From Mobula hypostoma (lineage: Eukaryota), in assembly GCF_963921235.1 (NCBI RefSeq), contig NC_086107.1, forward strand, positions 60,450,001-60,514,000: DNA of 64,000 bases, given 5' to 3'. Shown here one piece after another: positions 10,585 to 62,620 of this stretch; position 1 is the stretch's first letter; every line of letters begins with the position of its first letter. Below the pieces are notes generated by a model. The model was not told where the DNA came from. It saw nothing but the letters and a program-made list of their open reading frames with translations, and made no database searches. A program made the translations under genes and the position numbers.

Positions 10585-12082
10585 CCATAAAGTCAAGTAT
10601 GACTTGCTTCCACTCCACTTCTCTGGGCTCAAAGGTCAACCTGGAAACCTCAGACTCTGCTACAGAGAGGCCGGGGGTACTTGACTGGGGACATGGATGG
10701 GAGGATGGATGGTTGGTTGCTCTTTATGGAATTGGAATTGCTTTATTATTGTCACATGTACTAAAGTACAGTGAGAACTTGTCTTGCATGTAGTTCATAT
10801 AAATCAAATCATTACACAGTGCATTACTGAGCTTAAGTTACTCCAAAGGGACACAAGGTTTTCAATGCCATCCTGAAGGCTCCTTCTCCATTTTGAGCAG
10901 CCACAGGCCAGAGATTCCAACACATTGAAGAGGTTAATTTGTTTCAAGGAGGCTTTGAGAACATCCTTGAAATATCTCCACCTGATAATAATTTTTCCCA
11001 TGACAGAGCTTGGAGTACGATATGCATTTTGAGAGTACGGTGTGAGATATCTGAACAATATTCCCACTGATTGACTGTAATTAGGGCTTCACCGCTGGGA
11101 ATGTCAGCTCTGGGAGAGGACGCTAATATCACTTCACCTACAATTTATTTGAATAATTCTATGGAGCGGTCGTAAGAATTTAGTGTCTTGAGCACCCTTT
11201 GAACTGCATTTTCCAACATCTGAAGAACAAACTACCTTTGCACGAGAATAAAATAAAGAGCAAGTCATATCAAAGCTACTTCAGCATCAGTCCTACTTTA
11301 GGGTAGTACAGAATCAAACACATTTTTTCAATATTTTATCCGTGAATAATTCTGAACCTGCAATCATAAGGTGTGATGAGAAATTGGGTTAATTGTTAAA
11401 GAGTTGAGGGGTTATTATGTAATAACTATACACAAAAATGTAATTCGTGTAAAATGTGACAAAGATCTCTGATTCTGGAATGAGCTGAGAAGAAACTACA
11501 GACCGAAACTGTCTGTAAATATCTCTTCATTAAAGTAAACTTTCCATGCAGTTACCATTAATGTAATCAGCAGTGACTTATAAAGGTTCCATTCAAAGAC
11601 AAGGCTTATTAGAAGTCTACGGTCATTAACCAGCTAGAGACAAAGGGACATGAGCAATTGTTCACAAGATTGGAGATATGCAGGAAGAAAGGTGTAGGAA
11701 CTGTGTGAATGATCTGTGTCAAAGAGATAACGGTAACAAATGGCCACCCTATCACTTACGTGGAATTGAAAGGACATTTGGAATATTAATGGCAGTGGCA
11801 TTGAAATCAAGTAGACTTTTTTAAAGACTGACTGGTGTTTAACTGAGCAATGAAATTAAGCACAGAACTACACTTCAGGAGAAAACAAAATAGAGAGCAG
11901 ACTGTAGACAATGTCACTGTATCAAAGGACCCCCACACATTGAGAGATGTGACCTATTTGTCATCTACTACCTGAATTTTTCAACTTAATAAATTCTCAA
12001 ACTTATTAAGACATGAGAGAATACAACCAATTAAGTGTGACATTAGGAAAGTGTGTATGGAACTGGAGGAGATAGCTGGGGT

Positions 12083-13675
12083 ACTGAATACTTTGCTTCA
12101 GTATTCACAACGGAAAAGGACTTCGGCGATTGTAAGGATGATTTGCAGCGAACTGAAAAGCTTGAGCATATAGACATTAAGAAAGTGGATTTGCTGGAGC
12201 TTTTGGAAAGTATCAAGGTGGATAAGTCACTGGGACCAAATGAGATATACCCAGAGCTACTGTGGGAGGTGAGGGAGGAGATTGCTGAGCCTCTGGCAAT
12301 GATCTTTGCATCACCAATGAGGACAGGAGAGGTTCCAGAGGATTGGAGGGTTGCAGATGTTGTTCCCTTATTCAAGAAAGGAAGTAGAGATAGCCCAGGA
12401 AATTATAGGCCAGTGAGTCTTACTTCAGTGGTTGGTAAGTTGATGGAGAAGATCCTGAGAGGCATGACTTACGAACATTTGGAGAGGCATAATATAATTA
12501 GGAATAGTCAGCATGGCTTTGTCAAAGGCTTACGAAGTAAGTAAGTAAGTGACTTACTTACAAAGTACCTTACGAGCCTGATTGAATTTTTTGAGGATGT
12601 GACTAAACACATTGATGAAGATAGAGCAGTAGATATAGTGTATACAGATTTCAGCAAGGCATTTGATAAGGTACCCCATGCAAGGATTATTGAGAAAGTA
12701 AGGAGGCATGGGATCCAAGGGGACCTTGCTTTGTGGATCCAGAAATGGCTTGATCACAGAAGGCAAAGAGTGGTTGTAGATTGGTCATATTCTGCATGGA
12801 GGTTGGTGACCAGTGGATCTGTTCTGGGACCCCTTCTCTTTGTGATGTTTATAAATGACCTGGATGAGGAAGTGGAGGGATGGGTTAGTAAATTTGCTGA
12901 TGACACAAAGGTTGGTGGTGTTGTGGATAGTGTGGAGGGCTGTCAGAGGTTACAGCGGGACATTGATAGGATGCAAAACTGGGCTGAGAAGTGGCAGATG
13001 GAGTTCAACCCAGAAAAGAGTGAGGTGGTTCATTTTGGTAGGTCAAATATGATGGCAGAATATAGTATTAATGGTAAGACTCTTGGCAGTGTGGAGGATC
13101 AGAGGGATCTTGGGGTCCGAGTCCATAGGACACTCAAAGCTGCTCTGCAGGTTGACCCTGTGGTTAAGAAGGCGTACAATGCATTGGCCTTCATCAACCA
13201 GGGGATTGAGTTCAAGAGCCAAGAGGCAATGTTACAGCAGTATAGGACCCTGGTCAGACCCCACTTGGAGCACTATGCTCAGTTCTGGTCGCCTCACTAC
13301 AGGAAGGCTGTGGAAACTATAGAAAGGGTGCAGAGGAGAATTACAAGGATGCTGCCTGGATTGGGGAGCATGCCTTATGAGAACAGGTTGAGTGAACTTG
13401 GCCTTTTCTCCTTGGAGCGACGGAGGATGAGAGGTGACCTGATAGAGGTGTATAAGAGGATGAGAGGCATTGATTGTGTAGATAGTCAGAGGCTTTTTCC
13501 AGGGCTGAAATGGCTAACATGAGGAGTCTCTTTTAAGAGACTCCTGGATAGGTACATGGACCTTAGAAAAATGGAGGGCTATAGGTAACCCTAGGTAATT
13601 TCTAAAGTAAGTACATGTTCGACAGCATTGTGGGCCGAAGGGCCTGTATTGTGCTGTAGGTTTTCTATGTTTCTA
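12083..13675 (+). mobile_element. CR1 LINE, 5'-truncated, disrupted RT
   Basis: PEDWRVADVVPLFKKG, DFSKAFDKV, SKFADDTK motifs and a (tttctatg) tail. Confidence 0.95.
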
Positions 13676-13844: not shown

Positions 13845-14260
13845 AGACAAGACCATAATACCACAAGATATAAGAGTACAATTAGGCCATCGAGCATGTT
13901 CCAGCATTCCATCATGGCTGATCCCGGATCCCACTCAACCCCACACACCTGCCTTCTCACCATATCCTTTGATGCCCTGACTGATCAGGAAACGATCAAC
14001 TTCCACCTTAAATATACCCACGGACTTGGCCTCCACCGCAGTCTGTGGCAGAGCATTCCACAGATTCACTGCTCCCTGGCTAAAGAATTTCCTCCTTATC
14101 TCTGTTCTAAAAGGTCACACTTAATTCTGAGGCTGTGCCCTCTAGTTCTGAATACCCCATCATAGGAAACATCCTCTCCACATCCACCCTATCTAGTGCT
14201 TTCAATGAGATCCCCCGCATTCTTCTAAGTTCCAGTGAGTACAGGCCCAAAGCTGCCAAG
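13845..14260 (-). mobile_element. CR1 LINE 3' fragment
   Basis: Reverse complement of a CR1 3' end (gcattccacagattcact, accataataccacaag tail). Confidence 0.8.
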
Positions 14261-15409
14261 GATGGCCAACGACAGACAGACAGTGAGGACCTACATTGCT
14301 GTGCTAAACACCAGTGGCATAACGGGCAGTAACTAACAAGGAGACAACTGCATCAATGTTTGGTGTAGCAGAGGGTACCACACTGACTTGGTTGGAAAAT
14401 GCAATCCCCAATGTGGAATTAAACCAGTCCAAACACAAGACCCCAGGACCAATGGTTTACGCATTAACGTAAACTGTTCCCTGAACAGATAAATGCAGCA
14501 AATCTCTTTGATTCTGCTGAAAGCATACATGCACATTAAGCAAGGATATGATGGGCTTGGGTTCCAGCACCCTGCTCAAGTTGAATACTCATTTTATTTT
14601 AATGGAAATTGAATATGAAAGTAAGCTTCAGATACAATACTTACAAAAAGTATTCACCACCACCCCCCAGAAGTTTTCATGCTTTATTGTTTAACATCAT
14701 TGAATCACGATGGATTTAATTTGGCTTTTCTTGACACTGATCAACAGAAAAAGACTCTTTCTTGTCAGTGAAAACAGATTTCTACAAAGTGAACTAAATC
14801 ATTAACAGATACAAAACATAAAATAATTGATTGTATAAGTATTCAGCCCTTTTAGTACAACACACCAATTCATCACCGGTGCAGCCAGTTGGTTTTAGAA
14901 GTCAATAATTAATTAAATTGAGATCACCATGTGCAGTCAAGGTGTTTCAATTGATGGTAGTAAAAATACACCTGTAGCTGGAGGGTCCAACTGCAGGTGA
15001 GTCAGTATCCTGCCAAAAACTACACCATGAAGTCAAAAGAACACTCCAAGCAACTCCGTGAAAAGGTTATTGAAAAGCACATGTCCGGAGATGGATACAA
15101 GAACATTTCCAAATCATTGAATATCCCTTAGAGTATAGTTAAGTCAATCATCAAGAAATGGAAAGAATATGGCATAGCTGTAAATCTGCCTAGAGGCCAT
15201 ACTCAAAAATTGAGTGACTGTGTAGGAAGGGGGTGAGTGAAAGAGGCGACCAAGAGACCGATGAGAACTCTGGAGGAATTACCAGCTTCAGTAGCTGAGA
15301 TGGGAGAGACTGCGCATACAACTGTTGCCCGGGTGCTTCACCAGTCACAGTTTTGTAGGACAGTGGCAAAGAGAAAGTCACTGTGGAAAAAAACTCACAT
15401 GAAACCTCA

Positions 15410-15595
15410 AGCAACACACATCAAAGAGATTTGAAATCTCTTACTAGCTCTTCTTTCAGTTAGTCCTGACAAAGGGTCTCGGCCCGAAACTTCGACTGTA
15501 CCTCTTCCTAGAGATGCTGCCTGGCCTGCTGCGTTCACCAGCAACTTTCATGTGTGTTGCTTGAATTTCCAGCATCTGCAGATTTCCTCATGTTT
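15410..15595 (+). mobile_element. Penelope-derived short insertion with degenerate hammerhead, nested in Tc1
   Basis: 13-bp TSD ACATGAAACCTCA (15397-15409, 15596-15608). Inverted arm agcaacacacatcaaag pairs with ctttcatgtgtgttgct. Confidence 0.85.
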
Positions 15596-15873
15596 ACATG
15601 AAACCTCAGCTAGTTTGCCAGAAGGTATGTGGGAGACTCTAAGGTCAGCTGGAAGAAGGTTATACGGCCTGATGAAACCAAAATTGAGCTTTTAGCCATC
15701 AGACTAAACACTGTTTGGCATAGACTAAACACTGTTTGGCATAAACCAAACACCGTGCATCATCAAAAACTCACCATCCCTACCATGAGGTATGGTGATG
15801 GCTGCATCGTGTTGCGTGGGATGCTTCACTGCCGCAGACCCTGGAAGGCTTGTGAAGGTAGAGGGTAAAATGA

Positions 15874-17415
15874 GGACCTTGAGGGAAGTTAGTGTGGAAA
15901 TAGCAGAGGCTCTGACAGAAACATTTCAAATGTCATTAGAAACGGGGATGGTGCCGGAAGATTGGCGTATTGCTCATGTTGTTCCATTGTTTAAAAAGGG
16001 TTCTAAGAGTAAACCTAGCAATTATCGGCCTGTGAGTTTGATGTCAGTGGTGGGTAAATTGATGGAAAGTATTCTTAGATGGTATATATAATTATCTGGA
16101 TAGACAGGGTCTGATTAGGAACAGTCAACATGGATTTGTGCGTGGAAGGTCATGTTTGACAAACCTTATTGAATTTTTTGAAGAGGCTACTAGGAAAATT
16201 GATGAGGGTAAAGCAGTGTATGTTGTCTATATGGACTTCAGTAAGGCCTTTGGCAAGGTCCCACACGGAAGGTTGGTTAGGAAGGTTCAATCGTTAGGTA
16301 TTGATATTGAAGTAGTAAAATAGATTCAGCAGTGGCTGGATGGGAGACACCAGAGAGTGTGGTAGATAACTCTTTGTCAGATTGGAGGCCGGTGACTAGT
16401 GGTGTGCCTCAGGGATCTGTACTGGGTCCAATGTTATTTGTCATATACAGTAATGATTTGGATGAAGGTGTGGTAAATTGGATGAGTAAGTATGCAGATG
16501 ATACTAAGATAGGTGGAGTTGTGGATAATGAAGTAGGTTTTCAAAGCTTGCAGAGAGATTCAGGCCAGTTAGAAGAGTGGGCTGAAAGATGGCAGATGGA
16601 GTTTAATGCTGATAAATGTGAGGTGCTACTTTTTTGTAGGGCTAATCAAAATAGGACATACATGGTAAATGGTAGGGCACTGAAGAATGCAGTAGAACAG
16701 AGGGATCTAGGAATAATGGTGCATAGTTCACTGAAGGTGGAATCTCATGTGGATAGGGTGGTGAAGAAAGCTTTTGGTATGCTGGCCTTTATAAATCAGA
16801 GCATTGAGTATAGGAGTTGGGATGTAATGTTGAAATTGTACAAGGCATTGGTGAGGCCAAATTTGGAGTTTTGTGTACAGTTTTGGTTACCAAATTATAG
16901 GAAAGATGTCAACAAAATAGAGAGAGTACAGAGAAGATTTACTAGACTGCTACCTGGGTTTCATCACCTAAGTTACAGAGAAAGGTTGAACAAGTTGGGT
17001 CTTTATTCTTTGGAGCGTAGAAGGTTGAGGGGGGACTTGATAGAGGTATTTAAAATTATAAGGGGGATAGATAGAGTTGACATGGATAGGCTTTTTCCAT
17101 TGAGAGTGGGAGAGATTCAAACAAGAGGACATGAGTTGAGAGTTAAAGGGCAAAAGTTTAAGGGTAACATGAGGGGGAACTTCTTTACCCAGAGAGTGGT
17201 AGCTGTGTGGAACGAGCTTCCAGCAGAAGTGGTTGAGGCAGGATTGATGTTGTCGTTTAAAGTTAAATTGGACAGCTACATGGACAGGAAAGGAATGGAG
17301 GGTTATGGGCCGAGTGCAGGTCGGTGGGACTAGGTGAGAGTAAGAGTTCAGCACGGACTAGAAGGGCCAAGATGGCCTGTTTCTGTGCTGTAATTGTTAT
17401 ATGGTTATATATGGT
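15874..17415 (+). mobile_element. CR1 LINE nested in Tc1 transposase
   Basis: RT motifs (GVPQGSVLGP, KYADDTK), (tatatggt) tail, TSD TAAAATGA (15866-15873, 17416-17423). Confidence 0.95.
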
Positions 17416-24449: not shown

Positions 24450-25140
24450 TGAATTAACTTTATTTCTTACATCTTTCGCAAACATGAGTAAAAATCTTTA
24501 CATTACGGCTCTGTCTAAATGTGCAATTTATGGTACTTTGTAATAAATAGTATGTACAACAGGACAGTCAATATAACATAGAAATACAATTGTATCAGTG
24601 TAAATAAATTAGTCTGATGGCCTGGTGGAAGAAGCTGTCCCCGGAGTCTGTTGGTCCTCGCTTTTATGCTGCCGTACTGTTTCCCCAATGGTAGCAGCTT
24701 GAACAGTCTGAGGTTGGGGTGATTCGGGTCCCCAATGATCCTTCGGGCCCTTTTTATGCACCTGTCTTTGAAAATGTCCTGAATAGTGGGAAGTTCACAT
24801 CTACAGATGCGCTGGGCTGTCCGCACCACTCTCTGCAGAGTCCTGCGATTAAGGGAGGTACAGTTCCCACACCAGGCAGTGATGCAGCCAGTCAGGATGT
24901 TCCCAATTGTGCCCCTGTAGAAATTCCTTAGGATTTGGGGACCCATTCCAAACTTCTTCAACCATCTGAGGTGAAAGAGGCACTGTTGTGCTTTCTTCAC
25001 CACACAGCGGTATGTACAGACCACGTGAGATCCTCGGTGATGTTTATGCCAAGGAACATTAAGCTGTTCACCCCCTCAACCCCAGATCCATTGATGTCAA
25101 TAGGGGTTTGCCTGTCTCCACTCCTCCTGTAGTCCACAAC
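24450..25140 (-). mobile_element. Rex1/Babar LINE 3' fragment
   Basis: VVKKAQQCLFHLRWLKKFG...LTGCITAWCGNC...IIGDPNHP. Same family as 56735-57640. Confidence 0.88.
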
Positions 25141-26254: not shown

Positions 26255-26782
26255 CAACTGTCACAAGCAGGCCTTCCTGGAGGCCTAACATTTGAATTCC
26301 GATTCCCATTCCGACACGTCAGTCCATGGCCTCCTCGTGTCACAATGAATATAAAGAGCAGCACCTTATATTCGGTCTTGGTGCCTCCAACCTGTTGGAA
26401 TATCGATTTTTCTTTTTGGTAAACAAATCCCACCACCCACCACCTCCTCTATTACCCACTCTGACTTCTCACCTGCCTCATATTTCCACTGGGTCTCCTG
26501 CTCCTTTCCTTTCTCCTATGGTCTATTCTCCTCTCCTATCAGATTCCTTCATCTCCAGCCCTTTCTCACCCACCTGGGTTCACCTATCACTTCCCAGCTA
26601 TTCCGCTTCCAGCTTTTTATTCTGGCATGTTCCCCCTTTCTTCTCAGCTCCGAAGAAGGGCCTCTGCCCGAAACATCAACTGTTTACTCTTTTCCATAGA
26701 TGCTGCCTGACCTGCTGAGTTCCTTCAGCATTTTGTGTGTGTTGCTTGGATTTCCAGCATCTGCAGACTTTCTCCTGTTTTG
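26255..26782 (+). mobile_element. Penelope-like element 3' fragment
   Basis: Degenerate endonuclease C-terminus (EQHLIF.LG) followed by a pyrimidine-rich UTR, degenerate hammerhead and gatgctgcctgacctgctgagttcc tail. Confidence 0.8.
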
Positions 26783-33771: not shown

Positions 33772-34802
33772 GTGAGTCACACTTTTTAATATTTGTTTCT
33801 AAAGTCATAGGCCTGGGATGCAAGAGTAATTTTAACAATTACTCTACTGAAAAGGTTGCCAATAATTCTCTTAATCTACCTGCCTAAAATTATTTTATTC
33901 AAAATGACATGGTACTTGCAGTAGAAGACAGTTTAGACCAAGAGTTCCCAAGACCACTTGCCTAATGGCATAAAAAGGTTGGGAGCCCCTTATTTAGACT
34001 CTGGCATCTTCTCCACTTAATTAGCTCATGGCTATTGGATTGTAGCCATTGCTTTTTATTCCAGCAGTAACTTTTAGCTTTGTTCATTGAACATATAATA
34101 TCTACTTATTCAAATGTCCTGCTTCAGCCATCAAGGAAGAGTTCCAAAGATTTGGAACTGAATGATCTTGTACTGCCCTATAAACCCATCTCTTTTCCTC
34201 CTTTCTGAAGAGAAAAGGCCTAGCTTGCTCACCTTTCCTTGTAAGACCTACTCTCCAATTCGGGTAGCATCTTGGAAAGTCTCTGCACCCTCAAACTTTC
34301 AGGTCCTTTGTATGAGGTGTCCAAAACTGAAAACAATAATCCTGTTGAGGACTGACCAAAGCTTCTTTATCGAGCAGCATTGGTCTATGGCTTTTGAACT
34401 CAATCTGCCCTGACTAATGAAGGTCAACCCTGTTAATCTACACTGACACTTAAGGGGATCTATGGGCATGGACCCTGAGATTTCCCTGTTCCTCCATACT
34501 GTTATGAATCCTGTTTCAACCATGTGAAGTGAATCACTTCACACTTCTCCATCTGTGACTCATCGCAGCTCTACATCCTATTAATGTTGTGTTGTAACCT
34601 ACAACAGGATCTTACAATCCACAACACCAACAGAGTGCCATCAACAGACACTCCCTCTTGCAAGTCATTGCAAGGACAGAGGTTCCAGAACAGATCATTT
34701 GGAATGCAGCTAATCACTCCATGCATGATCTGCTCCATCTACTGCCTCCCTCTGCCTTCTGTGGGCAAACCCGTTCTGAATCTGCCTTGTCAAGATCTTT
34801 CA

Positions 34803-35490
34803 AACAGGAGAAAGGATGCAAATGCTGGAAATCCAGGCAACACACAAAATGCTGGAGGACCTTAACAGGCCAGGTAGCATCTATGAGAAAAAAGCACAGT
34901 GAACGTTTTGGGCCAAGACCCATCAGCAGGACTGGGAAGGGATGAGTAGATTTAAAAGATGGGGGAGGGGAGAGAGAAAAACGTGAGATGAGATGTGAAA
35001 TGTTGGGGGCGGTGGCAGGTGAAGTAAAGAGCTGGGAAATTGATTGGTGAAAGATATGGGGCTGGAGAAGGGAGACTGGTTGGAGAGAGCAGAAGGCCAT
35101 GGAAGAAAGCAAGGGGGAGGGCACCAGAGGGAGGGGGTGGTGCATTACCAGAAGTTTGAGAAATAGATGTTCATCAGGTGGAGGCTGCCCAGATGGATTA
35201 CAAGGTGTCATTCCTCCAACCTGAGTGTGGCCTCATCACAACAGAGGAGGCCATGGATTACCAAATGGGAAGTGGAGTTAAAATGGGTGGCTACTAGGTG
35301 ATCCTGCTTCTACGCTCCAACCACAAGGTACTTTGCAATATGGTCTACCAATCTACATTGGGTCTCACCGATATACAGGAGGCCACACTGGCCGCACTAT
35401 ATGACCCCCAGCAGATTCACGGTGAAGTGTCAATTCATCTGGAAGGACTGGGACTCTGGTAGTGAGGAAGGAGGCGTAGGGGCAAGTAAC
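34803..35490 (-). mobile_element. Penelope-like element 3' fragment (antisense to RPLP2)
   Basis: Reverse complement of the endonuclease C-terminus, UTR, hammerhead remnant and tail. Confidence 0.8.
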
Positions 35491-35543
35491 AGAACAAGTG
35501 CAGAGCACCTGTGCTCTGTCCTCCAGAAGAAGTGGGATCTCCC

Positions 35544-35745
35544 AGTGGCACGTGACCAAGTGGTTAAGGTGTTCGCCTAGTGATCTCAAGGTTGCTGGTT
35601 CGAGCCTCAGCTGTGGCAGTGTGTTTGTGTCCTTGAGCAAGGCACTTAACCACACATTGCTCCAGTGTCTGTGGGAGGAGTGGCGCCCCACACAGACTTC
35701 CAATCTGCACCTTGTAAGGCATGAAAATGCCTGATGCAGGCCTCT
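35544..35745 (+). mobile_element. tRNA-derived CORE-type SINE
   Basis: A box TGACCAAGTGG, B box GGTTCGAGCC, then CORE-like TGTGTCCTTGAGCAAGGCACTTAACC. Confidence 0.75.
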
Positions 35746-35749
35746 TGTG

Positions 35750-36280
35750 GTCTCGACGTTCCCTCCCCCCAGTGGCCACCAATTTTATATCCACTTTCAA
35801 TTCCAACATGTCAATCCGTGGCCGCCTCTGTCGTGATGAGGCCGCACTCTGGTTGGAGCAACAGCACTTTGTATTCTGTCTGGGTAGCCTCCAACCCAAC
35901 TTCTGGTGGTGCCCCCCTTCACCATTCCCCATCCTCTTTACCCCTCCCCCTCACTATAACTCCTTGCCTGCCCATCTCCTCCCATTGATTCTTCCCCTCC
36001 ATGACTTTCTGCCCTCTTAAGATTCCGTCTTCTCTAGCTCTGTATCTCTTACACCGATCAAGTTCCCAGCTCTTCAACCCTCTCCCTGCTGGTTTCACCT
36101 GTCACCTTGTTTCTCTTCTCCTTTTCCCCTCTTCTCCCCCCCCCCACCAAACTTTTAAATCCACTCAGCTTTTTCCTCCAGTCCTCTTGAAGGGTTTCAG
36201 CCCAAAATGTCAACTCCCTCCCCCCTCCCCCCCGAGATGCTGCCTGACCTGCTGCGTTCCTCCAGCATTTTATTTTGGTG
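35750..36280 (+). mobile_element. Penelope-like element 3' fragment
   Basis: LPPVAT...CRDEAALWLEQQHFVFCLGSLQP followed by UTR, hammerhead remnant and tail. Confidence 0.8.
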
Positions 36281-36579
36281 TGTGGGTCAGGATCATGCTT
36301 TGTTACTGTCAACAAAACGTTCAAGGCTTTAAACTGTACTTGAATAGCATCAAGGGTCTTGGTTAAAATGCTGGTATCGGTAAATGTGGTTATTTTATGT
36401 GGAACATTAATTTTGGATTAGCTTGTGCTACAGTGAATTCAGGTGGTAAAACTTCAGTGGTTTATTTAGCAACCCTTAGTTCCAAGCTACAGGATGGGAT
36501 TAAACCCTTGACTAGGCCACAATTTAGTTAGGAACTCTAGTGCGGTACCAAATTGTTGAGGACACACGTTTTTTTTGAT

Positions 36580-37565
36580 CGATCTTTAAGGATCGTGGTT
36601 TCCCTTCTGCCATATCAATGATGCCCTCGCCCACATCTCCTCCATTTCCCACACTTCGGCCCTCACCCCATCCTCCCACCACCACAACAGGGATAGAGTT
36701 CCCTTTCTCCTCACCTACCACCCCACCAGCCTCCGGATCCAGCACATTATCCTCCGCAACTTCCGCCACCTTCAACAGGACCCCACCACTAAGCACATCT
36801 TTCCCTCTCCACCACTTTCAGCAGGGATCATTTCCTCTGTGACTCCCTGGTCCACACGTCCCTCCCCACAGATCTCCCCACCCGGCACTTATCCCTGTAA
36901 GCGTAAGTGCTACACCTGTCCCTACACCTCCTCTCTCACCACCATTCTGGGCCCCAAACAGTCCTTCCAGGTGAGGCAACACTTCACTTGTGAGTCTGTG
37001 GTCATTTATTGCATCTGGTGCGGCCTCCTCTACATCGTGAAACCCGACGCAGATTGGGGGACTACTGTGTCGAGCACCTCCGCTCCGTCCGCCACAACAA
37101 GCAGGATCTCCCGGTTGCCACCCACTTCAGCTCTGCTTCCCATTCCCATTTGGATTTGTCCATACATGGCCTCTTTTACTGCCATGATGAGGCTAAACTC
37201 AGGTTGGAGGACCAACACCTCATATATTGTCTAGGTAGTCTCCAGCCCCTTGGTATGAACATAGAATTCTCCAACTTCCAGTTATTCCTTCCCCCATCCC
37301 AGTTTCACTCTACCCCCATCCCAGCTGCCTGTCACCTCCCTCATGGTTCTGCCTCCTTCTAGTACCCATTCTGTTTTCCCCTATTCCTTTTTCACCTTTC
37401 CTGCCTATCACCACCCTGCTTCCTCTCCCCCACCTTCTTTATAGGCCCTCTGCCCCTTCCCTCTTCAGTCCTGACGAAGGGTTCCGGCCCAAAACGTTGA
37501 CTGATCATTTCCATGGATGCTGCCTGACCTGCTGAGTTCCTCCAGCGTGTTGAGAGTGTTGTTTT
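36580..37565 (+). mobile_element. Penelope-like element (probably Neptune clade) with GIY-YIG endonuclease remnant
   Basis: GTYPCKRKCYTC Cys-rich linker, VIYCIWC..LLYI.ETRRRLGD..VEH, LRLEDQHLIYCLGSLQPLGMN across two frames. Hammerhead-like motif at 37466-37503. Confidence 0.9.
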
Positions 37566-38595
37566 GAAAAGATGTTAAACCAAGACCCCAGCTGCTTTCT
37601 AGTGTGTGCAGCAAATATCCCATGAAAGTATTCAAAGAGCATTGTCCAGCAATGTGTCTTGTATGGGATTAGATCCTAGCTCAGTTTTCAATGGCGCAAT
37701 AAAGGTAGTGGTTTATTGAAAACTACTTCAGCTTTAAATTTGTCTTTCTGCTTGGGTGGGTGGGTTCTGTGTATGTTAGTGGTTATGTCTAAAAGTTTAG
37801 AGTTAATGTTTGTTTTCTTAAATTTAACCTGTGGCTATGGTTGGCTATTTTGCCACCATTTTGTAAGGAGCTATTTAGGATGCCTTTCACATCCAAAGCT
37901 CATTTAGCTGAAGTAATTCTTTTAAAAAAAATTACTATTGTAATGCAAGAAGTTGCTTAGGTGACTAGAATGTTAATGAAGAAAGATGGCTGGGTTTTCT
38001 TTTGGTAATTGGAGATGGGAAACATGTTGGCCAGAGCACTGAGGTGTCTGCATGTCTTATTTACCCAAGAACAGAGAAGAGATTCTGGCTGATTTTTGTT
38101 GCCACCACTACTGCAGTGTTGTATCACTTGTTCTAGATGGTATTGAAATGAGAGCTTGTTCCATACTTGCCAGAAAAAGCCACCACCCTGCCAATAAGTT
38201 GCCTTGAGACAAGGGTTCACAGCTTAGTGTGATTGAGATCGCTGGTAAAAATTTCCGTACCTCTGACTTTTGTGCCTCATTCCCTGAATATTCACTTGTG
38301 TATTAAATTTTTATTAGTATGAGATGATGAGGCTCACTCTGGAATTGTGTGGGGATAGAAGTTCGTAGGTTCTTGATTGTCAGGTGCCATGCAATTAATT
38401 TGTGCAGAAGACACAGGAAAATTGCTGGAACCCCAAACAATCTGCTGCATGTGGAGAAGTATTTAATACCTGGTGGATTTTGGGTGCAGGTTTATGCGGG
38501 CATTGCCTTTGAATTGTTGAACTGGCTAAATGAGGCCAAATTGACCCTCTATTGGGTTGGTGGTGAGTAATGAGTTGACAAGTTGTCTCGTTTAG

Positions 38596-41410: not shown

Positions 41411-43268
41411 ATAGAAACATAGAAAATAGGTGCAGGAGTAGGCCATTCGGCCCTTCGAGCCTGCACCGCCATTTATTATGATCATGGCTGATCATCCAAC
41501 TCAGAACCCAGCCTTCCCTCCATACCCCGTGACCCCTGTAGCCACAAGGGCCATATCTAACTTCCTTTTAAACATAGCTAATGAACTGGCCTCAACAGTT
41601 TGCTGTGGCAGAGAATTCCACAGATTCACCACTCTCTGTGTGAAGAAGTTTTTCCTAACCTCGGTCCTAAAAGGCTTCCCCTCTATCCTCAAACTGTGAC
41701 CCCTCGTTCTAGACCTCCCCAACATCGGGAACAATCTTCCCGCATCTAGCCTGTCCAATCCCTTTAGGATCTTATACGTTTCAATCAGATCCCCCCTCAA
41801 TCTTCTAAATTCCAACGAGTACAAGCCCAGTTCATCCAGTCTTTCTTCATATGAAAGACCTGCCATCCCAGGAATCAATCTGGTGAACCTTCTTTGTACT
41901 CCCTCTATGGCAAGGATGTCTTTCCTCAGATTAGGGGACCAAAACTGCACACAATACTCCAGGTGTGGTCTCACCAAGGCCTTGTACAACTGCAGTAGTA
42001 CCTCCCTGCTCCTGTACTCGAATCCTCTCGCTATAAATGCCAGCATACCGTTCGCCTTTTTCACCGCCTGCTGTACCTGCATGCCCACTTTCAATGACTG
42101 GTGTATAATGACACCCAGGTCTCGTTGCACCTCCCCTTTTCCTAATCGGCCACCATTCAGATAATAATCTGTTTTCCTATTTTTGCCACCAAAGTGGATA
42201 ACTTCACATTTATCCACATTAAATTGCATCTGCCATGAGTTTGCCCACTCACCCAACCTATCCAAGTCACCCTGCATCCTCTTAGCATCCTCCTCACTGC
42301 TAACACTGCCACCCAGCTTCGTGTCATCCGCAAACTTGGAGATGCTGCATTTAATTCCCTCATCCAAGTCATTAATATATATTGTAAACAACTGGGGTCC
42401 CAGCACTGAGCCTTGCGGTACCCCACTAGTCACCGCCTGCCATTCTGAAAAGGTCCCGTTTATTCCCACTCTTTGCTTCCTGTCTGCTAACCAATTCTCC
42501 ACCCACACCAATACCTTACCCCCAATACCATGTGCTTTAAGTTTGCACACTAATCTCCTGTGTGGGACCTTGTCAAAAGCCTTTTGAAAATCCAAATATA
42601 CCACATCCACTGGTTCTCCCCTATCCACTCTACTAGTTACATCCTCAAAAAATTCTATGAGATTCGTCAGACATGATTTTCCTTCCACAAATCCATGCTG
42701 ACTTTGTCCGATCATTTCACCGCTTTCCAAATGTGCTGTTATCACATCCTTGATAACTGACTCCAGCAGTTTCCCCACCACCGACGTTAGGCTAACCGGC
42801 CTATAATTCCCCGGTTTCTCTCTCCCTCCATTTTTAAAAAGTGGGGTTACATTAGCCACCCTCCAATCCTCAGGAACTAGTCCAGAATCTAACGAGTTTT
42901 GAAAAATTATCACTAATGCATCCACTATTTCTTGGGCCACTTCCTTAAGCACTCTGGGATGCAGACCATCTGGCCCTGGGGATTTATCTGCCTTCAATCC
43001 CTTCAATTTACCTAACACCACTTCCCTACTAACATGTATTTCGCTCAGTTCCTCCATCTCACTGGACCCTCTGTCCCTTACTATTTCTGGAAGATTATTT
43101 ATGTCCTCCTTAGTGAAGACAGAACCAAAGTAATTATTCAATTGGTCTGCCATGTCCTTGCTCCCCATAATCAATTCACCTGTTTCTGTTTGCAGGGGAC
43201 CTACATTTGTCTTTATCAGTCTTTTCCTTTTTACATATCTATAAAAGCTTTTACAGTCCGTTTTTATG
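41411..43268 (-). mobile_element. Young 5'-truncated CR1 LINE with uninterrupted RT frame
   Basis: 596-aa ORF 41501-43291 (first few codons come from flank) with PEDWRVANVTPLFK, YLDFQKAFDKV, GVPQGSVLGP and SKFADDTK. (tttctatg) tail. No APE endonuclease domain. Confidence 0.97.
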
Positions 43269-43489
43269 ATTTTACATTGTCCACTTTCCAATGAGATGCT
43301 AATAATTATAATGATTATAAGATCTTATTTAATATACTTGGAGATGAATAACTGGTTGTCACTGAATATTTTCCATTTGGCTGTTTGTCATCTTCAGCCC
43401 CTCAACAATGCACCTATTGTACCACCTTCCCCTTTCCAAAAAAAATTGCAAACTACACAAGGTGTATAGGGAAATTTGGATTCTATGTG

Positions 43490-57779: not shown

Positions 57780-58150
57780 TGACCTGTCCATCACCTCCCT
57801 CTTTTTCCCCACCCCCTCCTTTTATTCCACTGACCTCTCCTATCAAATTCCTTTTTCTTCTTCAGCCCTTTAACTCTTCCACATATCAGCTCCCAACTTT
57901 TCATATCATGTGCCACCCACATTCCCCTGTACCTGGAGTCACCTATCACCTACTAGTTTGTATCCCCTGCCCTCCCCCCACATGCTTATTCTAGCTTCTG
58001 CCCCGTTCTTTTAGTCCTGATGAAGAGTCTCGGTCTGAAGCGTCGACTGTTTATTCCTCCTCATACATGTTGTCTGACTTTCTGAGTTCCTCCAGCACTT
58101 TGTATGTAATTATCAAGATTTCCACTGTCTGAGTAATCTCGTGTCTATGT
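57780..58150 (+). mobile_element. Penelope-like element 3' UTR with hammerhead-like motif
   Basis: TAGTC CTGATGA AGAGTCTCGGTCT GAAGCGTC GACTG at 58012-58049 plus the family tail. Confidence 0.75.
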
Positions 58151-58590: not shown

Positions 58591-59249
58591 TTCTGTCCCA
58601 CTCCCAAGTTCTTTACCAGCTCAGAAGAACCCTTACCCCCGTGCTAGGCAGTTAGCATTGCCCTAGAGACTCTGACTTTGTGGTAGCTAGCATTGTCTTT
58701 TCCGTTTACCACGCAATCCCTACCGTTGCGGCCGTATACACGAGCCGGACATCAGTAACCCGCTGCCTACCTCTTCCACAAAAGTGACCTTGTGTATGTT
58801 TGGTATCCAGTTTCGCATGGTAGCTAGAGGCAGAGAGTGCGGGACACCGGAACCCGGAGCAACAAACAGCCTGTTGCAGGAACACAGCGGATCGGGCAGC
58901 ATCTGGTGGGGGGGAGGGGGGGGGGAGAGAAACAGCGCAATTCCTCTCCCTAACTTTTCACACTCAGACAATGCTTTTCGACCTGCCGAGTTACTGGAGT
59001 ATGATAGCTCTTGCTGAGATATTTTGAGAAGCTTTTCTCTGTAAAAAGGCTAAATAAATCGGTCTGTTTTTGCGTTGAGTTTCAAGTATCTTCCCTATGG
59101 GCGTGGTGCTGTTTTAAGCGCTTAAGTTTGAGAATCAGAATGACAACAACAAAATATAGCACATGCTGGAAATATGAAAATAAAGACAAAAATACGTTAT
59201 CAGTGATATTGCGATCGTTTCCGGTATCCTTGCACATTGTACAGAATAC

Positions 59250-59470
59250 CCTGGCCAACCAATTAGCGGCAGCGCCTTCTGTGTATGATAATAATCTACA
59301 TATAAAAACAAGCCCGACCTTTCACTGTCAGCAGTTGACAGCTGCGCTACGTGGATCGGGGTGGGAGCTCTGTGATTGGCTAACGCGACGGTCATTCAAG
59401 GTGGGTGGCGAAGGTAATTGGCTGGGGTGGAGGGAGAAAGGGAGTATCCAGGAACGCTCCCAAGCAGAGC
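59250..59470 (+). promoter_or_regulatory. PNPLA2: Putative PNPLA2 promoter
   Basis: CpG-rich region upstream of the ATG. CCAAT (~59259), two ATTGG (~59375, ~59417), TATAAAA (~59301), TACGTG (~59348). Confidence 0.55.
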
Positions 59471-59638
59471 GGAACTGAGCCCAGCAGAGCAGAGCAGAGG
59501 AGGTTAGGAGCCGGGTGTTTGGAAACGTCTGTGCGGCAGCTTAGCGGAAGATGTGAGTGCGGCGGCCAGAGGGTGTCAGAAGCCGGTTCCAAGTACGTTT
59601 GCCGGAGGGCGTCGTTTGAAGTTGAGCCCACAGAGGAG

Positions 59639-59828
59639 ATGCTGCGGCCCGAGGACTCGTCCTGGAGCATTTCGTTCGCCGGCTGCGGGTTTCTGGGCAT
59701 CTACCATGTCGGAGTGGCCAGCTGCTTGTGCGAGCATGCCCCGCAGCTGGTGCACAACGCCAGCAACATCTACGGGGCATCGGCCGGCGCGCTGACAGCC
59801 TGTAGCTTGGTCAGCAAAGCCTGTCTCG
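59639..59828 (+). CDS. PNPLA2: PNPLA2 (adipose triglyceride lipase, patatin domain) first coding exon; gene continues beyond the window
   Basis: [30 protein letters not shown]...IYGASAGAL contains the GCGFLG oxyanion loop and the GxSxG catalytic serine (S48). Donor G|GTAAGA. Assignment to PNPLA2 rather than a paralogue rests on PIDD1-RPLP2-PNPLA2 synteny. Confidence 0.92.
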
Positions 59829-60142
59829 GTAAGAAACGAATTAAGAGACGCCCTGTTCCCGGGATGGGAATCTCTCTCGCCTCTAATCTCACCCTTTGTC
59901 GAACTCCCCAACTATCAGCGAGGTACCTTGGGCGCAGAGGTGCACATTTTACGCACAGAAAGAGTGTCTGGGGATTGTAGGAGGGAGGGAAAATATCTTT
60001 CATCTGGCGGAAAGGTATTTTACAAGCAGGTACAGCACCTTAAGGTTTTGAACAGATGGAGAGGCAAGGGGTGATGCCAGTGAGGTTAAGTCATGAAAGG
60101 GCAGGGATGAGAATGCTCGTAAAAAGAAGTTAGCATAGATTG

Positions 60143-60400
60143 CAAACACGGGAAAATCTGCAGATGCTGGAAACCCAAGCAACACACAAAAAGCTGCAGG
60201 AACTCAGCGGGCTACGGAAAAGAGTCGAGGTTTTGGGACGAGACCCTTCAGCAGGAGTCTGCAAGCGGCGGAGAGAGAATCCCAGTTGTGGATCCCAGTC
60301 CTGATGAAGGGTCTCGGCCCGAAACGTCGACCGTTTACTCTTTTCCAACCATTGATGCTACCTGACCTGGTGAGTTCCTCCTGCATTTTGAGTGTGTTGT
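60143..60400. mobile_element. Fold-back Penelope-derived element with two oppositely oriented hammerhead motifs
   Basis: The left half is the reverse complement of the Penelope tail and the right half is the forward copy, joined at ~60260-60295. Confidence 0.85.
60296..60333 (+). ncRNA. Minimal type I hammerhead ribozyme motif (Penelope-associated)
   Basis: CAGTC-CTGATGA-A-GGGT(CTCG)GCCC-GAAA-C-GTC^GACCG: conserved core boxes, stem II, palindromic ACGT stem III, and stem I CAGTC/GACCG with one mismatch. Confidence 0.75.
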
Positions 60401-60989
60401 CAGGACAAATCGGATGTAATGCTGGTGCTAAAGGAAACAAATCGTAATATCAGGTTTTGGAATTGCATCCCATTGGCTAGTGAAAACATTCCCTTTAGTC
60501 ACAATCCTCCCACTTAGTGGCCTGTAGCTAACCTATTCTCTCTGTCATGGTGATTACCTGCGCTCACCATTCTCCCGCCTCCCACCAAGACTCCGGGCAA
60601 TTCACAGTAATAGTCTGCTAGCAGATGTGGATGGAAATTGCCTAGGCATAGAAGACTATGGGCAAGTGCTGGAAGATGGGATAAATGGAGATGTGTCAGC
60701 ACAGATATGGTGGGCCAAGGACTGGTTCAAGTCAAGTTGTGTCTGTTGCTGTGTGCACAATACAGCAATGACATGAATGTACAAAAAAATCCTTCCTTGT
60801 AGCAGATTCACAAGTTCAGGAAACACAAAATATGAATTGTACATAAATTATGTAACAGAGTGGAGAGGAAAACTACAGAATGGTACATTTGCACAAAAAC
60901 AGTAAGTTCGTAGTAGAGCAAGGGGTGGACTGTAGTGTTCTGTTCCTACGGTAGAATTGGGGTTGTATTTTAGGTTTCCATGCTGTACA

Positions 60990-62620
60990 AGATCATAAAA
61001 CATAGGGGCAGAATTAGGCCACTCAGCCCATCATGTTTGCTCCACCATTCAATCATGTCTGATTTTCCCCCTCTCAACCCCATTCTCCTGACTTCTCCCC
61101 ATAACCCTTGATACCCTTACTAACCAAGAACCTATCAACCTCTGCTTTAAATTTACAGAATGACTTGGTCTCCAGAGCTTCTGTAGCAATGAATTCTACA
61201 GATTCACCACCCTCTGTCCAAAGAAATTCCTCCTCATCTCTGTTCTAAGGAAGTGTCCTTGTATACTGAGGCTGTACCCTCTGTCTCTGACTCCCCCACT
61301 ATAATATATTCTTTTATATTCTATTCTTGGAATGAATGCTCACATTGCATTTGCTTCCCTTGCTGCTGAGTCCATCTGCTAGTTAACCTTTAGGAAATCC
61401 TGTACTGGGACTCCCAAATGCTTTATACATCCAGTTTCTGAATTTGCTCCCATTCAGAAAATAGTCTCCACCTATATTCCTTCTGCTAAAGTGCATGACT
61501 ACACACCTAATTACACTGTATTCCATCTGTCACTTCTTTTTCCCTTCTCTTAATCTGTCCAAATCTTTCTGCAGACTTCCTGCTTACTCAACACCGCCTG
61601 CCCCTCCACCTTTCTCTGTATAGTCTGCAAATTTGGTCACAAAGCCATCAGTTCCATTCTCCAGATCATTAACGTGTACCATGAAAAGCCGTGGACCCAA
61701 CATAACTGGTAATATCTAACTGTGCTACAAAATCATCTACCTTATTTTGTATACTGTGTGCACTCAAATATAACATTTTTTGTCATGCATTCACCACCCT
61801 TTTCAATTTTGTCTTCATGTTACCTGAAGTTAAATTCTTACTTTCTGAACTTTTTATGGAATTCTCCAGAATGAAGAATTTGACAACACTTCCTGCACTC
61901 TCCTTCCCTTTTACTTTATCCGTATTTTTCCAAGCTGCTGAGTCCACACCCCACTATTTCATTTAAAGCCTTATCTACAACTCTAGTTTTGTATTTCGCT
62001 AGGACCCTGGTTCCATCATGGTTTAGATGGAGCCGACCCATTGGAACAGCTCCCTGCTTTCCCAGTACTGGTGCCAATGTCCCACAAATGTTGACTGTAC
62101 TTTTTTATTCATAGATGCTGCCTGACCTGCTGAGTTCCTCCAGCATTTAGTGTGTGTGTTCCCCACAAACTCAAACTCAAACTCACTTTTCCCACACTAA
62201 TCTTTGAGCCACACATTTAGCTCTCTGATTTTATTAACCCTGAGAACCCCGTAGCAATTTGCACTTGGCCCTGATAACGTTGCAGAGGTATTACCTTTTT
62301 TGGTTCTGCATTTTAAGTTGGTCTCTAGCTGCTCAAATTCCGACAGCTGAACCCCTTTCCTTATCCTTCCTACATCTTTGCTATCTACCTGGCCTCAGAT
62401 CAAATTTAAAGTAGTTAGTCTGATAGAAGTGACAGCCTCCTGAAACACAGGAGGTTCCCTCCCTGATGCATCGTTTATCTGAAGCTCAGATTCCAGGTCA
62501 TTAACCTTGAGCCTGAGTTCCTCCAGCAACCAAGTCTTTCTGTAGTTGTGGTCACCAGGAACCACAGTGGAGTCCAACTCCCATATCATGCAGCGATTGC
62601 ACATTACCTGATCCTGCACC
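60990..62620 (-). mobile_element. Internally deleted CR1 retaining an ORF1 remnant
   Basis: 3' end at ~60990. ORF1-like Cys/leucine-zipper N-terminus MQDQVMCNRCMIWE...LEELRLKVNDLESELQ at 62395-62619. Confidence 0.75.

What the first reader, a model, noticed from the sequence alone, without database searches (positions are those of the whole stretch)
60296..60333. Core-intact hammerhead ribozyme in sense orientation in a PNPLA2 intron
Seen: CAGTC CTGATGA A GGGT-CTCG-GCCC GAAA C GTC GACCG, about 470 nt after the PNPLA2 donor at 59828 and on the transcribed strand. It has both hammerhead core boxes, stem II, a GUC cleavage triplet (predicted cut after 60328), stem I (4 of 5 pairs) and a loopless palindromic stem III (ACGT). 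Known: Penelope-like elements carry minimal type I hammerheads with a palindromic stem III that cleave as dimers, and some vertebrate genes contain intronic hammerheads. Inference: this is the only one of eight copies here with an unmutated core, so it could cut PNPLA2 pre-mRNA when paired with another copy in trans, or be a substrate for exaptation.
Basis: partly seen in the sequence, partly recalled or inferred. Interest (0 to 1): 0.78.

Follow-up and report, generated by a model that had tools for sequence, protein, structure and literature searches.

The report
Penelope-type hammerhead motif in intron
The hammerhead ribozyme motif is really there, but it is one ordinary, probably inert copy of the small ribozyme motif that Penelope-like jumping genes scatter through this ray genome, and here it is locked in a hairpin with an inverted sister copy.

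Summary
It has both core boxes, a 4-bp stem II, GUC with the cut after 60328, 4 of 5 helix I pairs, and a loopless ACGU helix III. It is not chance: a descriptor gave 0 hits in 300 shuffles.

It matches the published minimal hammerhead of Penelope-like elements (PLEs) point for point. It forms the 5' edge of a dispersed retro-copied "tail". The window holds nine substantial copies and only this one has an intact core.

Neutral decay predicts about 1.5 intact cores among nine, so one is expected.

A function in the patatin-like (PNPLA2-like) pre-mRNA is not supported:
- An inverted sister copy lies 40 nt upstream. The 291-nt RNA folds into a long hairpin (z = -6.6) that pairs nearly every ribozyme base with probability about 1.
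- In the only workable dimer, the partner's core would cut 60328, not this copy's own core.
- Curated Rfam hammerhead models do not match.
- The available runs are contigs only, so RNA ends could not be read.

The scan has found this family hundreds of times in this genome. Verdict: a new member of a known kind, of low interest.

The parts
60296..60333 (+). Minimal type I hammerhead motif. Helix I 5' strand 60296-60300; CUGAUGA 60301-60307; unpaired A 60308; stem-loop II 60309-60320; GAAA 60321-60324; ACGU half of helix III 60324-60327; C17 at 60328 (predicted cut 60328/60329); helix I 3' strand 60329-60333.
   Evidence: Direct reading. Only descriptor hit with a helix I in the window. 0 hits in 300 shuffles. 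No Rfam hit.
60292..60400 (+). Short-form retro-copied tail of the Penelope-like family. It starts at the hammerhead edge and ends after GTGTGTTG, about 72 nt past the predicted cut.
   Evidence: nhmmer E=2e-35. Alignment of nine copies. Contigs of other copies diverge just before 60296/60298 (table 7).
60142..60264 (-). Inverted sister copy (long-form tail), head-to-head with the first. Its hammerhead (about 60221-60258) is dead: CUGCUGA, CAAAAC and CCUC.
   Evidence: nhmmer E=1.7e-26. Alignment. Inverted repeats I1-I4.
60265..60291 (.). Spacer between the two 5' ends. It forms the apical part of the predicted hairpin.
60136..60424 (+). Predicted long imperfect RNA hairpin of the sense transcript, formed by the two opposed tails. 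It sequesters the hammerhead strand.
   Evidence: MFE -117.6 kcal/mol, z = -6.61, 0 of 200 shuffles as good. Pairing probability about 1 for nearly all of 60299-60329 (60304, 60317, 60326 unpaired). Arm-to-arm duplex -56.4 kcal/mol.
59636..59828 (+). First coding exon of a patatin-like phospholipase gene (PNPLA2-like). The donor GT is at 59829-59830.
   Evidence: Pfam Patatin E=3.5e-9, profile positions 1-50. Sequence. Atlas look-alikes are all patatin-like.
62055..62170 (+). Another sense copy of the tail in the same intron. Its hammerhead core is destroyed, but a GUU-GACUG substrate-like strand is kept.
   Evidence: nhmmer E=2.4e-26. Alignment.
58004..58140 (+). Family copy upstream of the gene. 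Box 1 is intact but A15.1 is G and stem II is decayed.
34800..36297 (.). A second head-to-head pair of the same family (34941-34800 minus, 36171-36297 plus) with longer arms. It shows that the inverted layout recurs.
15454..15597 (+). Family copy starting at the hammerhead edge (long-form tail, core mutated).
26638..26781 (+). Family copy extending upstream (long-form tail, core mutated).
37457..37599 (+). Family copy extending upstream (short-form tail; G12 lost at a CpG).

Best explanation
The motif is the minimal type I hammerhead that Penelope-like retroelements (PLEs) carry near their ends. Here it sits at the 5' edge of a roughly 105-nt retro-copied PLE tail that landed, head-to-head with a second and more decayed tail, about 470 nt into the first intron of a patatin-like (PNPLA2-like) gene.

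In the element's own life cycle the motif is thought to cut multimeric PLE transcripts as a domain-swapped dimer. That step comes from the literature and is not shown here.

At this locus it is most likely an inert passenger. Its core survives because the copy is only about 7-10% diverged, and possibly because it lies on the shore of the gene's CpG island. In the sense pre-mRNA it is predicted to be locked in a long hairpin with its inverted partner, so it does not cut the host transcript to any meaningful extent.
For: Shown here:
- Every sequence feature that Cervera and De la Pena list for PLE min-HHRs is present: the core boxes, an extra nucleotide between A9 and G10.1, the G10.1-C11.1 pair, a palindromic 15.2-16.2 with no loop 3, and a short open helix I (PMC4209133).
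- The motif belongs to a dispersed family with nine substantial copies on both strands, and the majority sequence of those copies keeps the hammerhead.
- The copies show retro-copy anatomy. Five extend 400 nt or more upstream with shared homology and four start at the hammerhead edge.
- There are two alternative 3' ends about 40 nt apart, four short and five long. This matches the optional 30-40 bp 'tail' and the two reverse-transcription start sites described for PLEs (PMC11167929).
- Head-to-head inverted pairs occur twice in the window. This layout is reported for PLE min-HHRs (PMC4209133).
- The repeat part reaches a summed contig depth of about 10^4, against about 8-9 for unique intron sequence. 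The family is therefore very abundant.
- Neutral decay predicts 1.5 intact cores among nine copies; one is observed. Changes are 1/37 in the ribozyme part and 6/59 in the tail, p=0.24.
- CpG o/e is 0.76 at 60200-60399, against 0.33 for the whole window and 0 beyond 60600. Several core losses in sister copies lie at CpGs, for example G12 in CCCGAAA becoming CCCAAAA.
- The hairpin has MFE -117.6 kcal/mol and z = -6.6. Ribozyme bases pair to the partner with p about 1, stem II and helix I have p = 0, and the duplex is -56.4 kcal/mol against -5.8 for the hammerhead shape and -10.5 for the double hammerhead.
Against: - No PLE reverse transcriptase or GIY-YIG ORF lies in this window. The RT ORFs present are CR1/L2-like LINEs. 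The link to an autonomous PLE therefore rests on motif and tail anatomy, the literature, and unchecked scan notes.
- Stem II is 4 bp here, shorter than the 6-8 bp described for Schistosoma and Drosophila PLE motifs.
- Secondary-structure prediction is an equilibrium model. Helicases or co-transcriptional kinetics could free the motif.
- Cleavage was not measured. The only runs available are contigs, which cannot show RNA ends.
- The two arms differ in divergence (7/96 vs 14/80 changes, counts). They may be two separate insertions rather than one fold-back event.
Confidence: 0.85

Rival explanations
1. The motif is active in vivo. It pairs in trans with another intact family RNA, or with a second pre-mRNA, as a double hammerhead. 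The patatin-like pre-mRNA is then cut at 60328/60329, lowering its expression.
For: - The substrate side needed for this is intact: ACGU, GUC and 4 of 5 helix I pairs.
- Family RNA or DNA is extremely abundant in the probable transcriptome runs.
- Dimer cleavage of PLE min-HHRs has been seen in vitro (PMC4209133; Lunse et al. 2016, as cited in PMC6765202).
Against: - The fold-back sequesters the motif.
- Helix III in the double hammerhead is only 4 bp. The whole dimer scores -10.5 kcal/mol, against -27.3 for a non-catalytic homodimer.
- Activity of such motifs is low even as dimers and mostly needs non-physiological Mg2+ (PMC4209133).
- No RNA-seq ends were seen at the predicted site of an Anolis PLE (PMC11167929).
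- Contigs in probable RNA runs run from the exon into the intron, and one spans 60305-61098, so uncut molecules exist.
- There is no sign of selection on the motif.
Confidence: 0.04
2. The relevant feature is not the ribozyme but the roughly 120-bp imperfect hairpin made by the two opposed tails. As intronic double-stranded RNA it could be edited, diced into small RNAs, or affect splicing of intron 1.
For: - Strong predicted hairpin (z = -6.6).
- Weak hits with microRNA-precursor shape only.
- The intron is present in probable RNA contigs.
Against: - No base differences were seen in the contigs (table 3), although contigs drop rare variants.
- The Rfam hits are far below gathering (17 vs 80 bits).
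- The same layout recurs as a by-product of PLE insertion. It needs no function.
Confidence: 0.07
3. The repeat is an independent non-autonomous element (SINE-like or solo retrozyme-like) that merely carries a hammerhead head. It is not a truncated PLE copy.
For: - Four of nine copies start right at the hammerhead edge.
- No PLE ORF is nearby.
- Animal retrozymes are proposed to derive from PLE pLTRs (bioRxiv 10.64898/2026.07.22.740005).
Against: - Five copies extend upstream into shared sequence, so the unit is not fixed.
- There is no tandem arrangement, which is what defines retrozymes.
- The dimorphic 3' end fits PLE reverse-transcription start sites.
- Even on this reading the machinery and the motif would still be PLE-derived.
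Confidence: 0.04

Closest known systems
Minimal hammerhead (min-HHR) of metazoan Penelope-like elements (Cervera and De la Pena 2014, PMC4209133; Lunse, Weinberg and Breaker 2016)
   Same: - Core boxes.
- Extra nucleotide before G10.1.
- G10.1-C11.1 pair.
- Loopless palindromic helix III that requires a dimer.
- Short open helix I.
- Thousands of dispersed, variable copies, some in opposite-strand pairs 100-700 bp apart.
   Different: Stem II is 4 bp rather than 6-8 bp. No RT/GIY-YIG ORF is linked within this window. The host is a ray, a group not specifically described in that paper.
Poseidon PLE of Anolis carolinensis (PAc), hammerhead and 'tail' (PMC11167929)
   Same: - The hammerhead sits a short distance upstream of the element's 3' insertion end.
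- There are two alternative ends 30-40 nt apart.
- An ATG is embedded in the CUGAUGA box region.
   Different: - Here the frame from that ATG, read by eye on the printed majority sequence, stops after about 21 codons, so no ORF follows.
- The ends lie about 72 and 112 nt from the cut, rather than about 85-92 nt.
- The end region is GU-rich rather than AC-rich.
[quoted passage not shown]
   Same: Type I topology, sense strand of an intron of a protein-coding gene.
   Different: - Those have a stable helix III and loop-loop tertiary contacts, act as monomers, and are conserved at orthologous positions.
- This one has none of these features.
- It matches no Rfam hammerhead model.
- It is one repeat copy among many.
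Non-LTR retrozymes of animals (PMC7229834; bioRxiv 10.64898/2026.07.22.740005)
   Same: Type I hammerhead that needs a second copy. Probable PLE ancestry.
   Different: Retrozymes are head-to-tail tandem arrays that give circular RNAs. Here the copies are dispersed or head-to-head, never tandem.

Membership tests
PLE minimal type I hammerhead (min-HHR) | Conserved core: C3-U-G-A-N-G-A9, G12-A-A, A15.1-U16.1, and H17 that is not G | tested here: met
   60301-60307 CTGATGA, 60321-60324 GAAA, T at 60327, C at 60328
PLE minimal type I hammerhead (min-HHR) | Unpaired nucleotide between A9 and G10.1, and a G10.1-C11.1 pair | tested here: met
   A at 60308; G60309 pairs with C60320
PLE minimal type I hammerhead (min-HHR) | Helix III reduced to a palindrome with no loop or a tiny one, so that only a dimer can form it | tested here: met
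   ACGT at 60324-60327 with no loop. The monomer does not fold as a hammerhead. The domain-swapped dimer is the only nested topology.
PLE minimal type I hammerhead (min-HHR) | Short open helix I (4-5 bp) | tested here: met
   CAGTC/GACCG gives 4 of 5 pairs. The family majority GACTG gives 5 of 5.
PLE minimal type I hammerhead (min-HHR) | Enlarged helix II (6-8 bp in the described metazoan families) | tested here: not met
   4 bp (three G-C and one U-G) with a 4-nt loop. The paper describes this as typical, not as required.
PLE minimal type I hammerhead (min-HHR) | Lies in the terminal repeat of an element that encodes RT plus a GIY-YIG endonuclease | tested here: inconclusive
   No GIY-YIG motif in any frame. 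The RT ORFs are LINE-type. Scan notes report such links elsewhere in this genome, but they are unchecked.
PLE minimal type I hammerhead (min-HHR) | Self-cleavage as a dimer | not testable with these tools
   Only Logan contigs were available. A transcription assay or end-specific RNA-seq is needed.
PLE insertion anatomy | Common 3' end with an optional 30-40 bp 'tail' (two reverse-transcription start sites) | tested here: met
   Four copies end after GTGTGTTG and five run about 40 nt further to ...CTGCAGATTTTCTCCTGTTT (PMC11167929)
PLE insertion anatomy | Variable 5' truncation, with tandem or inverted partial copies | tested here: met
   Five copies extend 400 nt or more upstream and four start at the motif. 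There are two head-to-head pairs.
Canonical type I hammerheads of Rfam (Hammerhead_1, HH9, HH10) | Score at or above the family's gathering threshold | tested here: not met
   No hammerhead hit at gathering, nor at E<=10 on 601 nt or 61 nt
Non-LTR retrozyme | Two or more head-to-tail tandem units, each with a hammerhead | tested here: not met
   The nhmmer map shows dispersed or inverted copies only

The most novel reading that the evidence does not exclude
Sense-strand intronic copies such as this one are substrates for the very abundant PLE-tail RNAs. An intact partner core docks on ACGU plus GACCG as a domain-swapped dimer and cuts the PNPLA2-like (lipase) pre-mRNA at 60328/60329. That would give a transposon-driven, ribozyme-mediated brake on host genes. 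Alternatively, the fold-back is processed as double-stranded RNA.
Probability: 0.04. Interest if true: 0.7.

Novelty: new member of a known kind. Interest (0 to 1): 0.14.

Why it matters
As it stands it matters little. It is one more copy of a published kind of ribozyme motif, in a genome where this scan has already logged the family hundreds of times.

Three points are useful for triage of similar findings:
1. An intact core in a single copy is the neutral expectation.
2. In a loopless hammerhead the dimer is domain-swapped. The substrate side (ACGU, GUC, helix I 3' strand) and the partner's core decide whether a given RNA is cut, not that RNA's own core.
3. Head-to-head sister copies can lock the motif in a hairpin.

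A genome-wide test would be the meaningful way to ask whether these motifs cut host RNAs in vivo. It would compare orientation bias for intact against mutated copies in introns.

Tried and rejected
- Rfam hammerhead models: no hit at gathering score or at E<=10 on 601 nt and 61 nt. I read this as a limit of models built on hammerheads with a helix III hairpin, not as evidence against the motif.
- RNA ends at 60328/60329: the four runs that hold the intron are Logan contigs of unrecorded type. Their small size and uneven intron coverage suggest RNA. Contigs break inside the repeat because of graph branching, and no ends table was produced, so the test is uninformative. The many 'joints' between 60317-60337 and 62108-62128 come from other family copies and are not splicing.
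- Read tools and the exon: I kept the read tools off the exon by choice.
- Orthology: a second species label holds 0.35-0.41 of the words of 59900-60700 and a third holds 0.13 (one search was busy). No more reads could be laid, so presence of the insertion there is unknown.
- PNPLA2 identity: PDB has no close relative and the Atlas gives only 'patatin-like'. The paralogue is therefore untested.
- Autonomous PLE: the GIY-YIG regex found nothing real. Pfam on ORFs upstream of the longer copies found nothing.
- Target-site duplication around the fold-back: only a weak 9-nt near-repeat, 60112-60120 / 60418-60426. I did not accept it.
- Lunse et al. 2016 (PMC5785218) is not held. I cite it only through PMC6765202.
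- Chance origin is rejected.
- Selection on this copy is rejected as unsupported.

Full report
**1. Observation**

One search shows that 60296-60333 on the + strand reads CAGTC CTGATGA A GGGT CTCG GCCC GAAA C GTC GACCG. In standard hammerhead numbering:
- 60301-60307 are C3 to A9.
- 60308 is an unpaired A.
- 60309-60312 pair with 60317-60320 (G10.1-C11.1, two more G-C pairs and a U-G) around a 4-nt loop.
- 60321-60324 are G12 to A15.1.
- 60325-60327 are C15.2, G16.2 and U16.1.
- 60328 is C17.
- 60329-60333 pair with 60296-60300 in 4 of 5 positions (one A.C mismatch).

The motif is not chance. The 28-mer has an expected count of 0.00. A min-HHR descriptor that I wrote finds this as the only hit with a helix I in the window, and finds none in 300 dinucleotide-preserving shuffles.

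No curated Rfam model matches it, at gathering score or at E<=10 on 601 nt or 61 nt.

**2. Host gene**

- ORF 59405-59980 carries the first 50 positions of the Pfam Patatin profile at residues 89-141.
- The exon ends ...TGT CTC G | GTAAGA at 59828/59829.
- Atlas look-alikes are all patatin-like phospholipase proteins.

The motif is therefore 468 nt into the first intron, on the transcribed strand. That the paralogue is PNPLA2 fits my memory of the human ATGL N-terminus, but no tool tested it (one search found no solved relative).

The exon sits in a CpG island: CpG o/e is 0.7-1.0 over 59200-59999, 0.76 at 60200-60399, 0 beyond 60600, and 0.33 for the whole window.

**3. What the motif belongs to**

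blastn and nhmmer find nine substantial copies of one repeat:
- 15454+, 26638+, 34941-, 36171+, 37457+, 58004+, 60264-, 60292+ and 62055+.
- About five fragments in addition.

The majority sequence of the copies keeps an intact hammerhead with a perfect 5-bp helix I. The ribozyme motif is therefore ancestral to the family. Only the 60292+ copy still has an unmutated core.

The copies have the anatomy of retro-copies:
- Five extend 400 nt or more upstream into shared, C/T-rich sequence, and four begin at the hammerhead edge.
- Contigs of other family members diverge just before 60296/60298 (table 7).
- There are two classes of 3' end. Four copies stop after GTGTGTTG, about 72 nt past the cut. 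Five run about 40 nt further.

That dimorphism matches the optional 30-40 bp 'tail' and the two adjacent reverse-transcription start sites shown for an Anolis Penelope-like element. In that element the start sites lie a little downstream of the hammerhead (PMC11167929).

The motif also shows every non-descriptor feature that Cervera and De la Pena list for PLE min-HHRs: the extra nucleotide before G10.1, the G10.1-C11.1 pair, and a palindromic 15.2-16.2 without loop 3 (PMC4209133). The one difference is a 4-bp rather than a 6-8-bp stem II.

I could not link the family to an autonomous PLE inside this window. No GIY-YIG motif exists in any frame. The three RT ORFs are LINE-type: they give L1/R2 or group II intron RT hits in PDB, and two of them are 60% identical, with a C-terminal motif I recognise as CR1/L2-like.

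Summed contig depth over the repeat is about 10^4, against about 8-9 over unique intron sequence, so the family is very abundant. Earlier notes of this scan describe the same family hundreds of times in this genome, a ray, and call it Penelope tails. I treat those notes as leads that agree with what I tested.

**4. Local context: a fold-back**

A second copy lies head-to-head just upstream (60264-60142, minus strand). Its hammerhead is dead (CUGCUGA, CAAAAC, CCUC). The arms are complementary over 60180-60256 and 60299-60399.

The sense RNA 60135-60425 is predicted to fold into one long imperfect hairpin: MFE -117.6 kcal/mol, z = -6.61, and none of 200 shuffles as stable.

In the partition function nearly every base of 60299-60329 pairs with the upstream arm at probability 0.88-1.0; only 60304, 60317 and 60326 are predicted unpaired. 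The stem II and helix I pairs of the hammerhead have probability 0.

The energies compare as follows:

| Structure | Energy (kcal/mol) |
|---|---|
| Arm-to-arm duplex | -56.4 |
| Non-catalytic homodimer (MFE) | -27.3 |
| Double hammerhead | -10.5 |
| Monomer, non-hammerhead fold (MFE) | -9.5 |
| Monomer in hammerhead shape | -5.8 |

The upstream arm is transcribed first, so the hairpin should also win kinetically. That last point is inference.

The same head-to-head layout recurs at 34800-35274 / 35798-36297, and it is reported for PLE min-HHRs (PMC4209133). I read it as a by-product of PLE integration.

**5. How a loopless hammerhead must work, and what that means here**

With no loop 3, A15.1-C15.2-G16.2-U16.1 of one RNA can only pair with the same four bases of a second RNA.

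- If helix I is kept within each molecule, the structure is crossing.
- The only nested arrangement that gives two proper three-way junctions is domain-swapped. The core and helix I 5' strand of molecule A hold the G16.2-U16.1-C17 and helix I 3' strand of molecule B, and the reverse.

Two consequences follow:
- The cut at 60328 would be made by a partner's intact core.
- This copy's intact core would cut the partner.

The only other sense copy in the same intron (62055+) has a destroyed core. It could at best be a substrate, not a partner that cuts 60328.

**6. Is the intact core special?**

I used each copy's tail divergence as a clock. The chance that 13 core positions remain untouched sums to 1.5 copies among nine, and one is observed.

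Within this copy the ribozyme part has 1 change in 37 and the tail 6 in 59 (Fisher p=0.24).

Several core losses in sister copies are at CpGs, for example G12. This copy keeps all five CpGs of the motif and lies on the shore of the CpG island. That offers a neutral reason for its preservation, although its sister arm did lose CpGs.

**7. RNA evidence**

The four runs that hold the intron are stored as contigs of unrecorded type. Their small size (143-241 Mb) and sample-to-sample differences in intron coverage suggest transcriptomes.

One contig runs from 35 nt inside the exon into the intron (59835-60181). Another covers 60305-61098. If these runs are RNA, unspliced and uncut molecules exist. 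Contigs cannot show ends, so cleavage is neither shown nor excluded.

**8. Literature**

- For PLE min-HHRs, activity in vitro is low even as dimers and mostly needs non-physiological Mg2+ (PMC4209133).
- For the Anolis PLE, hammerhead mutants insert normally and no RNA-seq reads start or end at the predicted site (PMC11167929).
- In Xenopus, related retrozymes are depleted from introns (bioRxiv 10.64898/2026.07.22.740005).

**9. Verdict**

The element is a Penelope-type minimal hammerhead in a retro-copied tail, a new member of a known kind. The proposed action on the host pre-mRNA is not supported by any test I could run, and the predicted fold-back argues against it. It remains formally untested.

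The N run at 7529-7692 was left untouched.

Noticed in passing
window 60136-60424: The two opposed Penelope tails form a predicted hairpin of about 120 bp in the sense intron RNA (MFE -117.6 kcal/mol, z = -6.6). It is a possible double-stranded RNA substrate.
   Followed up: partly
window 34800-36297: A second head-to-head pair of the same family, with arms of about 475-500 nt and about 520 nt between them. Four of the nine copies in the window are therefore in inverted pairs.
   Followed up: partly
window 12053-13522, 16332-17333 (+) and 41501-43291 (-): Three LINE reverse-transcriptase ORFs. The first two are 60% identical and end in an ...ERVQRRxTRxLPG...LERRRxRGDLIEVxK... motif, which I recognise as CR1/L2-like. 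None is Penelope-type.
   Followed up: partly
window 61025-61298, 13884-14159, 56044-55848: Another very abundant repeat (summed contig depth 6,000-47,000). One copy lies just downstream of the LINE ORF that ends at 13522, so it is probably that LINE's 3' region or a SINE that shares it.
   Followed up: no
window 15237-15434 (+): Remnant of a Tc1/mariner transposase HTH domain (Pfam HTH_Tnp_Tc3_2, E=4e-8), directly upstream of the family copy at 15454.
   Followed up: no
window 24515-25024 (-): An ORF with a Pfam ALKBH8_N match (E=1.5e-7). It is likely part of a retroelement ORF rather than a host gene.
   Followed up: no
window 59200-60000: CpG island (CpG o/e 0.7-1.0, GC up to 65%) over the promoter and first exon of the patatin-like gene. 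CpG drops to zero from 60600.
   Followed up: partly
window, all family copies: Seven of the nine substantial copies are on the + strand. The numbers are too small to test.
   Followed up: no
window 62113-62246: The central part of the tail (GATGCTGCCTGACCTGCTGAGTTCCTCCAGCATTTT) has by far the highest summed contig depth (about 90,000-260,000). That is more than ten times the depth of the hammerhead part, so many more genomic or RNA copies keep this segment than keep the ribozyme.
   Followed up: no
window 7529-7692: A run of 164 N. It was left as it is.
   Followed up: no
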